In this document: positions 11,897 through 15,000 of the stretch, one piece after another
Numbering within the stretch: the first letter of the stretch is position 1
Layout: each line of letters starts with the position of its first letter
NCBI GenBank assembly: GCA_047495785.1
Contig: JBLDXI010000124.1
Location: 1 to 40,521, forward strand
Reading direction: 5' to 3'
Length of the DNA stretch: 40,521 nt
Source: Lepidodermella squamata
Lineage: Eukaryota > Animalia > Gastrotricha
The notes under the pieces: model-generated
Seen by the model: the letters and a program-made list of their open reading frames with translations, nothing else
What the model was told of the DNA's origin: nothing
Databases searched by the model: none
Program-made: the position numbers and the translations under genes

Positions 11897-12063
11897 TGCG
11901 ATATCTGCGATTGAATATTAAATTTTCTGAGGTTAGTATCATCACCACTTCGACTGTTGTTTGCTAGTTTGCCGGTTCTGCGTTGACCATATACGCTGTT
12001 CATTATTGTTTAAATAAAATAATTTTCCTTTTTGAGATTTCGCTGTCTAAGCGAATTTTTAAA

Positions 12064-15000
12064 ATGTTAATGTTTTCCGCTGTCGGCGCTGGGCGCGACG
12101 AGTTATCTTTATTGAAAATAGAAATTTCTGAAAATTTAAAAAAAGTTGTTTTAGTTCCTGCTACCGATGCGAGCGAGTGGCTGGCCGAGGCTGACGAGGC
12201 TGTCGATGCTGATTTCCTGTTGTTCGGCGGTGATTGCGTTGCTAATACGCCACCCCGAGCGACGGTTGCAGGCGAGATCGACGATGCCCGAGCTGAGGCT
12301 GATGTCACGGCGTTCGGCAGTGCCAGCGTTTCGAAAACGCCACTCCGATCGCCGGCTGCATTGCTGCGCGATAGCAAGAACGAGCAACGCCCTGGAAAAA
12401 AAGAGTTTCCCTTAATTTTCTTTGTATTGACCGGGCTAGCCGGTTTTTATTTTGCTCTTTATGGCTCTGAGCCGGTTTTCGACTCTGTTTTTGCTCGTTC
12501 TTCAGGGCCTTCTGCTCTGGCGATCGAAGACGTTTTTGCTTTTCACGGCACGTATTTATTACCGAAGCCTTATGCGTCGGTAGTAGTAGCCGCTCCTAGC
12601 GGATCACGGCCGGTTTTTAGCACCAATTTTTGCCGTTCGCAAAGGCCTTCTGCTTTTGCAGACGTGAATTTTACTGAATTTCTTTTTGATTTTATGTCGA
12701 AGCACTCAGCGTCGGCATACGTAGCCGCTCCTAGCGGATTCCCGACCGATCGCGTCGGCTTAGCTGTCGAATTTTTGAGCGCATCCGTTTTTGCGATGCC
12801 CTTAGACGTCCGCGGCCGCCCCTGCGACTTGTCATTTTTTCTTGACTTTTTTGATAATTTTTGTCCGCTGTCCGTATTTTCCGGTCAATTTTTTCTGACC
12901 GTCCTTTCGGACAGGCAACAGATGTTGTTTTCGTACTACGGTGCTGACGGCGGCACGTGGATGCGTGATAACACTGTTGTTTTTCTCAGCGGTGAGGCGC
13001 TTCACGCGACCGCTGTCGTAACAGCTGGTGTTGTTTTGTTCGAAAAAGCGGTGTTGCTCGTATTGCTAGCATGGCGCACTGTTTGCACTGGTTATGGAGA
13101 ATTCCTAATTCTTCAACTTTTGTTTACGCAGGCGGCTGGCTGTTTAGCTTATGGTATTTACTTTGTCGTTTTTATAAAAGTTGTTAAAAAATTACAAAAA
13201 TTTGCTTCTGTTTTTGATGCGGATACGAGCAAGCGGCTAGCAGGCGATATCGAGGCGAACGATCGGTGCTGTTTGGCTTGTTGTTTGGCGTGCTGTTTGG
13301 CCGATGGTTTTACTTTTATCGCGAAAAGTAAAATTTTTAAAAAATTGAAAAAATTTGCTTCTGTTTTTGAGACGGATACGAGCGAGCGGTTGGCCAAGGC
13401 GAACGAGGCGGTCGATCGGTGCTGTTTGGTTTGTGGCCTGGCCTGCTGCCTGGCTGATGGTTTTGATTTTATCGCTGAAATTACAATTTTTAAAAAATTA
13501 AAAAATTTTGCCTCTGTTTTCGACAAGAATGCGAGCGAGCGATTGGCCAAGGCGGACGAGGCGGTCGATGCGGACGTCACGTCGTTCGGCGGTGACAGCG
13601 TTACGCGAACGCCACTCCGATCGGCGGCTGCAACTGCGGTCGACAACGCCCGGGCTGAGGCTGACGTCACGGCTTTCGGCGGTGATAGCGTATCGAGAAC
13701 GCCACCCCGACTGCCGGCTGCATTAACGATCGAACCTGAGGCTGATGTCACGGCTTTCGGCGGTGCCAGCGTATCGAGAACGCCACCCCGACTGCCGGCT
13801 GCATTGCTGCGCAAGATTGGACAACGCCCACTTAAAACCGAGTTTTCCTTAACTTTCTTATTAGTTAGCGGGATAGTCGGGATTTATTTTGGGCTTTGTG
13901 GATCCGAATTTGCTTTTGATTTTGCCCGTTCATCAGGTCCTTCTGCTCTGATGAACGGTGACGCTTTTGTTAGATTGCCGTTACTGCCGAAGCCTTCTGC
14001 GGCGGCTCTAGTAGTAACCGCTCCTAGCGGAATTGATAGTGTTGACTTAGACATTGTTGGCTCGGTGTGCTCGGGACCGTCGTTACTGCCGAAGCCTTCT
14101 GCGGCGACAGTTGTAGTAACCGCTCCTAGCGGAACGCGGTCCGATAGTGTGATAGTTGCTTTTGATTTTGCTCGTTCATCAGGGCCTTCTGCTTTGATGA
14201 ACGGTGACGCTTTTGTTAGATTGCCGTTACTGCCGAAGCCTTCTGCGGCGGCTCTAGTAGTAACCGCTCCTAGCGGAATTGATAGTGTTGACTTAGACAT
14301 TGTTGGCTCGGTGTGTTCGGGACCGTCGTTACTGCCGAAGCCTTCTGCGGCGACAGTAGTAGAAACCGCTCCTAGCGGACGATGCATTTCCCGCGACTTA
14401 GCATTCTCTCATGAATTTCTCTCGATTTTGAGCTGCTTTTACGCCCCGCAGTACAGCGCGGGTATACTTGATAGCGCTGCTAGAGCGATTTTATGGAAGA
14501 TGGTATGCACTGTTGTTTTCCTCAGTGGTGCGGCGCTTCTCGCGACCGCTGTTGTAAGGAGTCGATTTTTGACGGTTGTGTGTGATGTGGTTTGTGATAT
14601 GGTCATGTCGCTCGGCCATTTTTGTTTCCTGTTTGTTGTTCACCCAGGTGAACGCGAACTTGTAAAAAATCACGTGAAAAATGACAAAAACGATAGCAAA
14701 ATTGATCTAAGGGATAAAGTCAGGCGTAGCGAGTCCGTAGAAAGGTCGAATTTGTTCGAGGTTCTTCGGTTGCGCGGTGGTGCCGGACGAGATGAGAACG
14801 AAGAGAGACAAAGAGCAGAAGAGGAGAGAATTCGAGCAGCATGGGAAGGTGAAGGCGCTGGTGAGACTGTCGAGCGGCCACTAGACCAAGGTGAAGTTAT
14901 GGAAATGACGCAAGATTTGACGGCTGGTGAAGACACGCCGATGGATCAAAGCTCGGCGAAAGGCGCGACCAGTGAGCGAAAGCGACGTGCCGGTGATGAT

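What the first reader, a model, noticed from the sequence alone, without database searches (positions are those of the whole stretch)
11897..12066. LINE 5' end carries a second copy of the SL 5' end, suggesting promoter and cap hijacking
Seen: after the interrupted gene (11851-11896) and 4 extra bases TGCG, the SL-A sequence restarts exactly at ATATCTGCG (11901) and runs about 60 nt through exon, donor and stem-loop I before unique sequence. No ATG occurs until 12064, which is in frame with ORF1 and has A at -3. Inference: the retrotransposed RNA began at the SL +1, so it was transcribed from the SL promoter. This also marks the SL start at the position where SL-A and SL-B homology begins. The transcript would lack the 3' hairpin and could be translated like an SL-led mRNA.
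Basis: partly seen in the sequence, partly recalled or inferred. Interest (0 to 1): 0.8.

Follow-up and report, generated by a model that had tools for sequence, protein, structure and literature searches.

The report
LINE that starts at spliced-leader gene +1
A jumping gene (LINE) that lives in this small animal's spliced-leader RNA genes carries the first ~56 bases of that gene at its own front end, which shows that its RNA is started by the host gene's promoter, a trick known from trypanosome and rDNA elements but not from this type of LINE in an animal.

Summary
Window 11851-11896 is SL-A nt 1-46, then TGCG, then SL-A restarts at 11901 and runs 56 nt (weaker homology to about nt 78) into an APE+RT LINE. 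The first ATG is at 12064.

The duplication is the exception. Of 25 full-length copies in the genome:
- 18 are seamless (SL-A promoter, one SL 1-56, element);
- 3 carry a tandem SL duplication (2 events);
- 1 is joined inside the ATATCTGCG that SL-A shares with SL-B;
- 3 sit elsewhere yet begin at (A)ATATCTGCG. One of these has a clean 11-bp target duplication in a diverged SL-like gene.

So the template RNA begins at or within 2 nt of the leader start, which points to transcription from the SL promoter. The target is nicked at nt 32/33 (bottom strand) and about nt 46 (top strand). Homology between the cDNA end and the target usually restores a seamless promoter fusion, and rare end-joining gives the duplication.

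This follows the logic shown for R2 and matches SLACS promoter use.

Earlier reports of this scan already described SL-targeting LINEs on other DNA of this genome. This report adds the RNA start.

The parts
2143..2240 (+). Intact SL-A RNA gene in an element-free rDNA spacer. Leader is nt 1-31 ending CTGAG, followed by the GT donor, stem-loop I around the donor and a 3' hairpin at about nt 65-93.
   Evidence: There are 509 copies of the leader in the genome against 0 for the control pattern. No Rfam family matches.
2613..2710 (+). SL-B RNA gene, a paralogue that shares only TAA+ATATCTGCG with SL-A.
   Evidence: Copy L025 of the element is joined to this gene's promoter inside the shared 9 nt.
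11780..11850 (+). Upstream region of the interrupted SL-A gene, the putative SL promoter. It is identical to the one in front of the intact gene.
   Evidence: 100% identity of 9709-11896 with 1-2188. A partly conserved block appears upstream of the SL-like gene in metagenome relatives. Promoter function is inferred, not shown.
11851..11896 (+). Interrupted SL-A gene, nt 1-46: the target DNA up to the top-strand break.
   Evidence: The same break point (nt 43-46) is seen in L006, L024, L039 and L044.
11897..11900 (+). 4-nt filler TGCG at the 5' junction. It is not templated by the sequence upstream of SL +1.
   Evidence: Other junctions have different fillers: TAA, TT(A) and AA.
11901..11956 (+). 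Element-borne SL head: SL-A nt 1-56 (leader, donor, stem-loop I). This is the 5' end of the retrotransposed RNA.
   Evidence: Present in all 25 full-length copies, including ectopic ones. Nt 53 is A in every head, even where the 3' flank of the same insertion has T.
11957..12063 (+). Rest of the 5' UTR. The first ~22 nt still resemble SL-type genes (nt 57-78). There is no ATG, and no counterpart of the SL 3' hairpin.
12064..16821 (+). ORF1, 1585 aa from the first ATG, with internal repeats and no Pfam match.
16806..19592 (+). ORF2, 928 aa. APE-type endonuclease at aa 37-216 and reverse transcriptase at aa 530-776.
   Evidence: (PF03372, PF14529, PF00078).
19593..19812 (+). 3' UTR shared with the other copies. 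In this copy the canonical last ~98 nt, the AATAAA signal and the poly(A) are missing.
   Evidence: 29 of 30 loci have the canonical tail.
19813..19908 (+). Foreign 96-nt tail resembling the 3' end of another SL-targeting family. It joins SL-A at nt 27.
   Evidence: similar tail at the end of the element nested in L100.
19909..20000 (+). Remainder of an SL-A gene from nt 27, of a different allele (CAATACC) from the upstream piece (CATCACC).
33929..40519 (-). Second copy of the element, inverted, with its 5' end beyond the contig end. It has the canonical tail and A9, joined to SL-A nt 33 at 33928.

Best explanation
This is an APE+RT LINE specialised on the SL-A spliced-leader RNA gene in the rDNA spacer. 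It is inserted in the sense orientation just behind the splice donor.

Its endonuclease nicks the bottom strand at SL nt 32/33. The poly(A) tail joins there. The top strand breaks at about nt 46, giving a 14-bp target duplication.

Because the element sits 46 nt behind the SL start, RNA polymerase II starting at the SL promoter makes an RNA that begins with the leader. This RNA runs through the donor and stem-loop I into the element and ends at the element's own AATAAA/poly(A) site. That RNA is the retrotransposition template, so every full-length copy carries SL nt 1-56 as its head.

At a new SL gene, the end of the cDNA is complementary to SL nt 1-46 of the target. It usually pairs with the target, so second-strand synthesis restores one seamless promoter-SL-element fusion. 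When the ends are instead joined without that pairing, the whole head is added behind the cut gene. This gives the tandem duplication with a few filler bases seen in the window.

Shown: the junction anatomy and the position of the template's 5' end. Inferred: promoter use, polymerase type, heteroduplex priming, and any effect on cap or translation.
For: - Of 25 full-length 5' ends, 18 are seamless SL-A promoter fusions. At least 13 of these differ in poly(A) length, head variant or flank allele, so they are several events.
- Five independent non-seamless junctions end at SL nt 1 (+/- 0-4 nt). The window has TGCG then nt 1. C83/C108 have TAA then nt 5. L024/L057 lies in a diverged SL-like gene outside rDNA, with the 11-bp TSD TTAGTGTCCGT and a 2-3 nt filler. 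L013 and L003 lie elsewhere in the spacer. L025 is joined in the 9 nt shared with SL-B.
- The head is element-borne. Nt 53 is A in all heads where the 3' flank has T (L003, L004, L009, L023, L025), and nt 42 is discordant in L004, L009, L013 and L025.
- The top-strand break at nt 43-46 appears in five junctions, including two 5'-truncated copies. The 3' junction is at nt 33 in most of 30 loci, with A6-14 tails and AATAAA 13 nt upstream.
- The duplication pattern occurs only 3 times in the genome and always with the element.
- No ribozyme is found near the 5' end.
- Precedents exist. SLACS transcription starts at +1 of the interrupted SL gene (PMC3447711). For R2, upstream target sequence on the RNA gives uniform junctions plus a minority of tandem duplications whose length marks the RNA 5' end (PMC3774820).
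Against: - There is no RNA evidence.
- Many copies lie in rDNA arrays, where unequal crossing-over copies insertions, so the number of independent events is smaller than the number of copies.
- snRNA-type promoters in other animals favour short, non-polyadenylated transcripts (general knowledge). An 8-kb polyadenylated product is therefore not a given.
- The exact start is blurred. Some junctions and leader-headed retrocopies begin AATAT or AAATAT.
- The window copy is itself atypical. It has a foreign 3' tail, and its flanks come from different SL alleles.
Confidence: 0.78

Rival explanations
1. The head is a portable internal promoter. Sequences inside SL nt 1-56 direct initiation at nt 1, as intragenic elements do in some nematode SL RNA genes. 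The element would then bring its own promoter wherever it lands and would not depend on the upstream SL promoter.
For: Ectopic copies keep the complete head (L003, L013, L024). The head is 100% conserved over nt 1-56 but diverges after that. The RNA start would be the same as in the main model.
Against: 19 of 25 full-length copies sit behind an SL-A or SL-B promoter. No family of copies derived from an ectopic master is seen. Conservation of nt 1-46 is equally explained by copying from the target at each insertion: nt 42 agrees with the flank in 12 of 14 seamless pairs.
Confidence: 0.12
2. The head arose once, by reverse-transcriptase template switching onto SL RNA or by a single read-through event. 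The present copies were multiplied mainly by rDNA array turnover, not by retrotransposition of head-bearing RNA. In that case the junctions say nothing about today's transcription start.
For: Many copies lie in tandem rDNA units and some pairs are indistinguishable (L011/L012; C83/C108 share the TAA junction).
Against: Poly(A) lengths range from 6 to 14 and flank and head alleles are mixed. Head-bearing insertions with their own junctions occur in a non-rDNA SL-like gene with a TSD, in the SL-B gene and at two spacer sites. 5'-truncated copies with TSDs show ongoing target-primed insertion.
Confidence: 0.05
3. The window's duplication is a DNA-level accident (replication slippage or unequal exchange between two SL copies) in a seamless copy, and is unrelated to the RNA 5' end.
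For: Two nearly identical 46-nt repeats 50 bp apart are a substrate for slippage. The window copy also shows signs of recombination, with flanks of different alleles.
Against: A slippage product would have period 50 with nt 47-50 = ACTT, not TGCG. The second duplication has a different filler and a head truncated by 4 nt. Both upstream pieces end at the top-strand break site seen in truncated copies.
Confidence: 0.03
4. The RNA is cut out of a longer co-transcript by processing (for example a self-cleaving ribozyme, as in R2) at a site that happens to coincide with SL nt 1.
For: rDNA-resident LINEs such as R2 do this (PMC3774820).
Against: No ribozyme family is found at gathering or relaxed thresholds. 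The end coincides with the 5' end of the leader as seen on leader-headed retrocopies. rRNA genes are on the opposite strand.
Confidence: 0.02

Closest known systems
SLACS / CZAR / CRE1 / CRE2 (CRE clade, trypanosomatids)
   Same: Site-specific LINEs inside spliced-leader RNA genes, in the sense orientation. For SLACS, transcription is reported to start at +1 of the interrupted SL gene (PMC3447711; PMC12278014).
   Different: They encode a restriction-like endonuclease, insert within the leader exon and are protist elements. Here the endonuclease is APE-type and N-terminal. The site is behind the donor (nt 33-46), the head includes the donor and stem-loop I, and the host is an animal.
R2 elements whose ribozyme cleaves upstream in 28S (Eickbush model)
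   Same: The template RNA carries upstream target sequence. Junctions are mostly uniform, and a minority show tandem duplications of the target whose length marks the RNA 5' end. Duplications can be inherited and diverge, extending the 5' UTR (PMC3774820). The head homology fading at nt 57-78 fits that last point.
   Different: In R2 the 5' end is set by an HDV-like ribozyme on a Pol I co-transcript and the endonuclease is restriction-like. Here no ribozyme is found and the end coincides with the start of a small-RNA gene.
NeSL-1 (C. elegans SL1-specific LINE)
   Same: An animal LINE specific for a spliced-leader gene (PMC4640811).
   Different: It has a restriction-like endonuclease and a protease domain, and it targets the leader exon. 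I know of no report that it carries an SL head (own knowledge, not checked).
APE-type target-specific LINEs of the Tx1 and R1 clades
   Same: An APE endonuclease with sequence-specific insertion into multicopy genes (PMC4640811).
   Different: The published targets listed there do not pair APE-type elements with SL genes. Clade membership of this ORF2 could not be tested. Only three close relatives were found, all unnamed metagenome proteins.
U6 snRNA-L1 chimeric retrocopies (mammals)
   Same: A small nuclear RNA sequence sits at the 5' end of LINE-made DNA (own knowledge).
   Different: Those are sporadic template-switch products with variable L1 break points. Here the head-body junction is fixed in all 25 copies, so it is inherited through the RNA.

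Membership tests
CRE/NeSL-type SL-specific LINEs (SLACS, CZAR, CRE1/2, NeSL-1) | Restriction-like (PD-(D/E)xK) endonuclease downstream of the RT | tested here: not met
   ORF2 has an N-terminal Exo_endo_phos/APE domain (aa 37-216) before the RT (aa 530-776) and no other domain.
CRE/NeSL-type SL-specific LINEs (SLACS, CZAR, CRE1/2, NeSL-1) | Fixed insertion site within the spliced-leader gene, sense orientation | tested here: met
   The 3' junction is at SL-A nt 33 in most of 30 loci. The top-strand break is at nt 43-46. The site is in the intron side of the gene, not in the leader exon.
CRE/NeSL-type SL-specific LINEs (SLACS, CZAR, CRE1/2, NeSL-1) | Transcription from +1 of the interrupted SL gene (shown for SLACS) | tested here: inconclusive
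   Genomic junctions place the template 5' end at SL nt 1 +/- 2.
APE-type target-specific LINEs (Tx1 / R1 clades) | APE endonuclease plus RT in ORF2, a separate ORF1, and short target-site duplications at a specific sequence | tested here: met
   (TSD 11-14 bp).
APE-type target-specific LINEs (Tx1 / R1 clades) | Phylogenetic placement of the RT inside the Tx1 or R1 clade | not testable with these tools
   No reference set of LINE clades is available. The homologue search gave only unnamed relatives. PDB hits to L1 ORF2p and R2 are equally weak.
R2-like 'upstream target sequence on the template' mode of 5' integration | Mostly uniform 5' junctions | tested here: met
   18 of 25 full-length copies are seamless.
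R2-like 'upstream target sequence on the template' mode of 5' integration | A minority of junctions with a tandem duplication of upstream target sequence reaching to the RNA 5' end | tested here: met
   Three loci, two events, start at SL nt 1 and nt 5.
R2-like 'upstream target sequence on the template' mode of 5' integration | Self-cleaving ribozyme defining the RNA 5' end | tested here: not met
   No ribozyme family in the window at gathering score, nor in 11700-12400 at E<=1.
Spliced-leader RNA gene (identity of the target) | Leader exon followed by a GT donor inside a stem-loop, a downstream hairpin, high copy number, and the leader found joined to other RNAs | tested here: inconclusive
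   The architecture is compatible, but fold z-scores are not significant. There are 509 leader copies. In 19 of 20 sampled dispersed copies the leader is joined exactly after CTGAG to unrelated sequences. No Rfam SL family matches. Read-level proof comes only from an earlier scan report and was not repeated here.

The most novel reading that the evidence does not exclude
The SL head is more than a by-product. It may make the LINE mRNA pass as a host trans-spliced mRNA, with the same first 31 nt and possibly the same cap chemistry. This could follow removal of the retained intron piece by splicing from the head's own donor to the pyrimidine-rich AG at 12023-12036, 27 nt before the ATG. The same head could serve as a homing arm that re-creates the promoter fusion at every insertion. 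A variant reading is that leader-internal promoter elements make the head a portable promoter.
Probability: 0.15. Interest if true: 0.8.

Novelty: new variant of a known kind. Interest (0 to 1): 0.6.

Why it matters
This is a clear case of convergence. An APE-type LINE in an animal has reached the solution known from restriction-endonuclease LINEs of trypanosomes: it uses the promoter of the spliced-leader gene it interrupts. It combines this with the homology-guided 5' integration worked out for R2.

The rare duplicated junctions act as a natural record of the template's 5' end. They give a testable transcription start for both the element and the SL-A gene, in a phylum where I found no paper on spliced leaders.

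It also raises a concrete question about how an snRNA-type promoter can deliver an 8-kb polyadenylated, translatable RNA that still carries a splice donor.

Tried and rejected
- **RNA reads.** The look-up of sequencing runs gave two runs, neither on record as RNA. Nothing was laid.
- **Spliced form of the element.** I searched for the leader joined near the candidate acceptor at 12036. There were 0 matches in the genome. This gives no support, but it is not evidence of absence.
- **An older, third SL copy deeper in the 5' UTR.** Local alignment against SL-A was no better than shuffles, p about 0.4-0.6. Dropped.
- **Rfam.** No ribozyme and no SL family.
- **ORF1.** No Pfam family, whole or in thirds.
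- **LINE clade.** Neither the homologue search nor the PDB search can place it.
- **Second SL-targeting family.** I looked for an SL head at ectopic sites. Only 4 full-length copies exist, all in SL-A genes, so the result is uninformative.
- **Unspliced source copies of a leader-headed repeat.** Only 3 copies were found, all with the leader.
- **Copy 2's 5' junction.** The contig ends at 40521.

Full report
**What the window is.** Rfam finds 18S, 5.8S and 28S rRNA genes on the minus strand and 5S rRNA on the plus strand. The window is therefore a stretch of rDNA units. In the spacer of an element-free unit lie two small genes. SL-A is at 2143. Its leader is ATATCTGCG...CTGAG, followed by a GT donor, a stem-loop around the donor and a hairpin at about nt 65-93. 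SL-B is at 2613. They share only TAA+ATATCTGCG. No Rfam family matches either gene. Earlier reports of this scan call them spliced-leader genes of a probable gastrotrich. I did not repeat their read evidence.

My own support for the SL identity is genomic. The SL-A leader occurs 509 times in the genome against 0 for the control. In 19 of 20 sampled dispersed copies it is joined, exactly after CTGAG, to unrelated repeat 5' ends.

**The observation.** Window 9709-11896 is identical to 1-2188, so 11851-11896 is SL-A nt 1-46. Then comes TGCG, and from 11901 SL-A restarts and runs 56 nt. Weaker similarity to SL-type genes continues to about nt 78. The first ATG is at 12064, in frame with ORF1 and with A at -3. 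Downstream are ORF1 (1585 aa, no Pfam match) and ORF2 with an APE endonuclease and a reverse transcriptase. It is not a pure 50-bp duplication, because SL nt 47-50 are ACTT and not TGCG.

**Census of 5' ends.** The genome holds 25 copies of the element's 5' UTR. They fall into four groups:
- 18 are seamless: SL-A promoter, one copy of SL nt 1-56, then the element.
- 3 carry a tandem SL duplication. These are the window, plus C83 and C108, which share one junction (SL 1-45, TAA, then SL from nt 5). In C108 a different element was later nested in the head.
- 1 (L025) sits behind the SL-B promoter and is joined inside the shared ATATCTGCG.
- 3 lie elsewhere and begin at (A)ATATCTGCG.

The cleanest of the last group is L024/L057 in a diverged SL-like gene outside rDNA. 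It has the 11-bp target duplication TTAGTGTCCGT, 2-3 filler bases, then the head, and at the other end the canonical tail with A13. A genome-wide pattern search finds the duplication only at those three loci and never in an element-free SL gene.

**The head belongs to the element.**
- Nt 53 is A in every head, also where the 3' flank of the same insertion has T (L003, L004, L009, L023, L025).
- Nt 42 disagrees between head and flank in L004, L009, L013 and L025.
- In 12 of 14 seamless pairs nt 42 agrees with the flank. This fits nt 1-46 usually being supplied by the target.

**Target site.** Twenty-nine of 30 sampled 3' ends have the same tail: AATAAA, 13 nt, then A6-14. Most are joined to SL-A at nt 33. 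The upstream piece ends at nt 43-46 in five independent junctions: the window, C83, L024 and the 5'-truncated copies L039 and L044. The usual target duplication is thus nt 33-46. Three copies have long duplications of 269, 447 and about 960 bp, where the 5' end was joined further downstream in the spacer.

**Mechanism.**
1. The simplest reading is that polymerase starting at the SL promoter transcribes leader, donor, stem-loop I and the element as one RNA, which ends at the element's poly(A) site.
2. That RNA is reverse-transcribed at a nicked SL gene.
3. The cDNA end, complementary to SL nt 1-46, pairs with the target and gives a seamless fusion.
4. Occasional joining without pairing gives the duplication plus filler.

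This is the logic established for R2 elements whose RNA keeps upstream 28S sequence. There, junctions are uniform, and 5-10% are tandem duplications whose length marks the RNA 5' end. Inherited duplications then diverge and lengthen the 5' UTR (PMC3774820). Here the end is set by a transcription start and not by a ribozyme; none is found. Use of the SL promoter by an SL-resident LINE is reported for SLACS in Trypanosoma brucei (PMC3447711).

**What remains open.**
- I have no RNA evidence. I avoided that stretch in all later searches.
- The start is uncertain by 1-2 nt. Some junctions and leader-headed retrocopies begin AATAT or AAATAT, and the SL-A/SL-B shared block starts at -3.
- Cap type and translation are untested.
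- The head keeps an intact donor, so the RNA is not an ordinary SL-led mRNA.
- A candidate acceptor lies at 12023-12036, but I found no retrocopy of a spliced form.
- The window copy is unusual at its 3' end. The canonical tail is replaced by 96 nt resembling another SL-targeting family's tail, joined at SL nt 27, and the two flanks are different SL alleles. This looks like a template switch or recombination, and it does not affect the 5' junction argument.

**Relatives.** ORF2 has only three close relatives in the protein collection, at 74%, 52% and 51% identity. Two metagenome contigs hold whole elements at the homologous place of an SL-like gene next to 5S, in the sense orientation behind the donor. 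The association is therefore older than this species. The LINE clade could not be determined.

**Verdict.** The promoter-use inference is well supported by junction anatomy. Cap and translation claims are open. It works like SLACS (promoter use) and R2 (homology-guided 5' joining) but is a member of neither, because its endonuclease is APE-type. I rate it a new variant of a known kind. The scan had already reported SL-targeting LINEs elsewhere in this genome. The new element here is the position of the template's 5' end.

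Noticed in passing
window 19813-19908: Copy 1 lacks the family's canonical last ~98 nt and poly(A). Instead it has a 96-nt tail like the 3' end of a second SL-targeting family, joined to SL-A at nt 27. The upstream and downstream SL pieces are different alleles. Likely cause is a template switch or recombination between families.
   Followed up: partly
G000, e.g. L080-L099 (C1, C2, C4, C7 ...): There are 509 copies of the SL-A leader in the genome. In 19 of 20 sampled dispersed loci the leader is joined exactly after CTGAG to the 5' ends of various repeats, several with ORFs. 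One family has two junctions 4 nt apart (GAG|GGGACGG and GAG|ATAG|GGGACGG), as if two acceptor AGs were used. These look like retrocopies of trans-spliced (or leader-headed) transposon RNAs.
   Followed up: partly
L100 (G000:C108:9000-17400): A ~6-kb element of another family is nested in the SL head of a copy of this LINE. It has the 12-bp target duplication CTGAGGTTAGTA, so the head stays a live target for other SL-specific elements.
   Followed up: partly
L013/L056, L025/L058, L003/L053: Three full-length copies have their 3' end at SL-A nt 33 but their 5' end joined 269, 447 or ~960 bp further downstream in the spacer. This duplicates that much spacer, including SL-B and 5S in one case.
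   Followed up: partly
window 3802-5037: A 1.24-kb insertion in one 28S gene copy with a 370-aa ORF on the rRNA strand. The ORF shows weak C2H2 zinc-finger hits.
   Followed up: no
window 27375-27383: The rDNA units switch orientation inside an 18S gene (19916-26463 is the inverted repeat of 33928-27375 at 99.4%). This is either a palindromic rDNA junction or a fold-back assembly artefact. The window is a whole 40.5-kb contig.
   Followed up: no
L101 and L103 (ENA metagenome contigs): Relatives with about 51-52% ORF2 identity sit behind the donor of an SL-like gene (...AAATTTCAG|GTTYGTATC) next to a 5S gene. Their ORF1 is much shorter (about 690-735 aa against 1585 aa here).
   Followed up: partly
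window 12023-12036: A pyrimidine-rich stretch ending in AG lies 27 nt before the ORF1 ATG and could serve as a splice acceptor for the head's donor. No spliced retrocopy was found.
   Followed up: partly
It was left out of all later searches.
   Followed up: no
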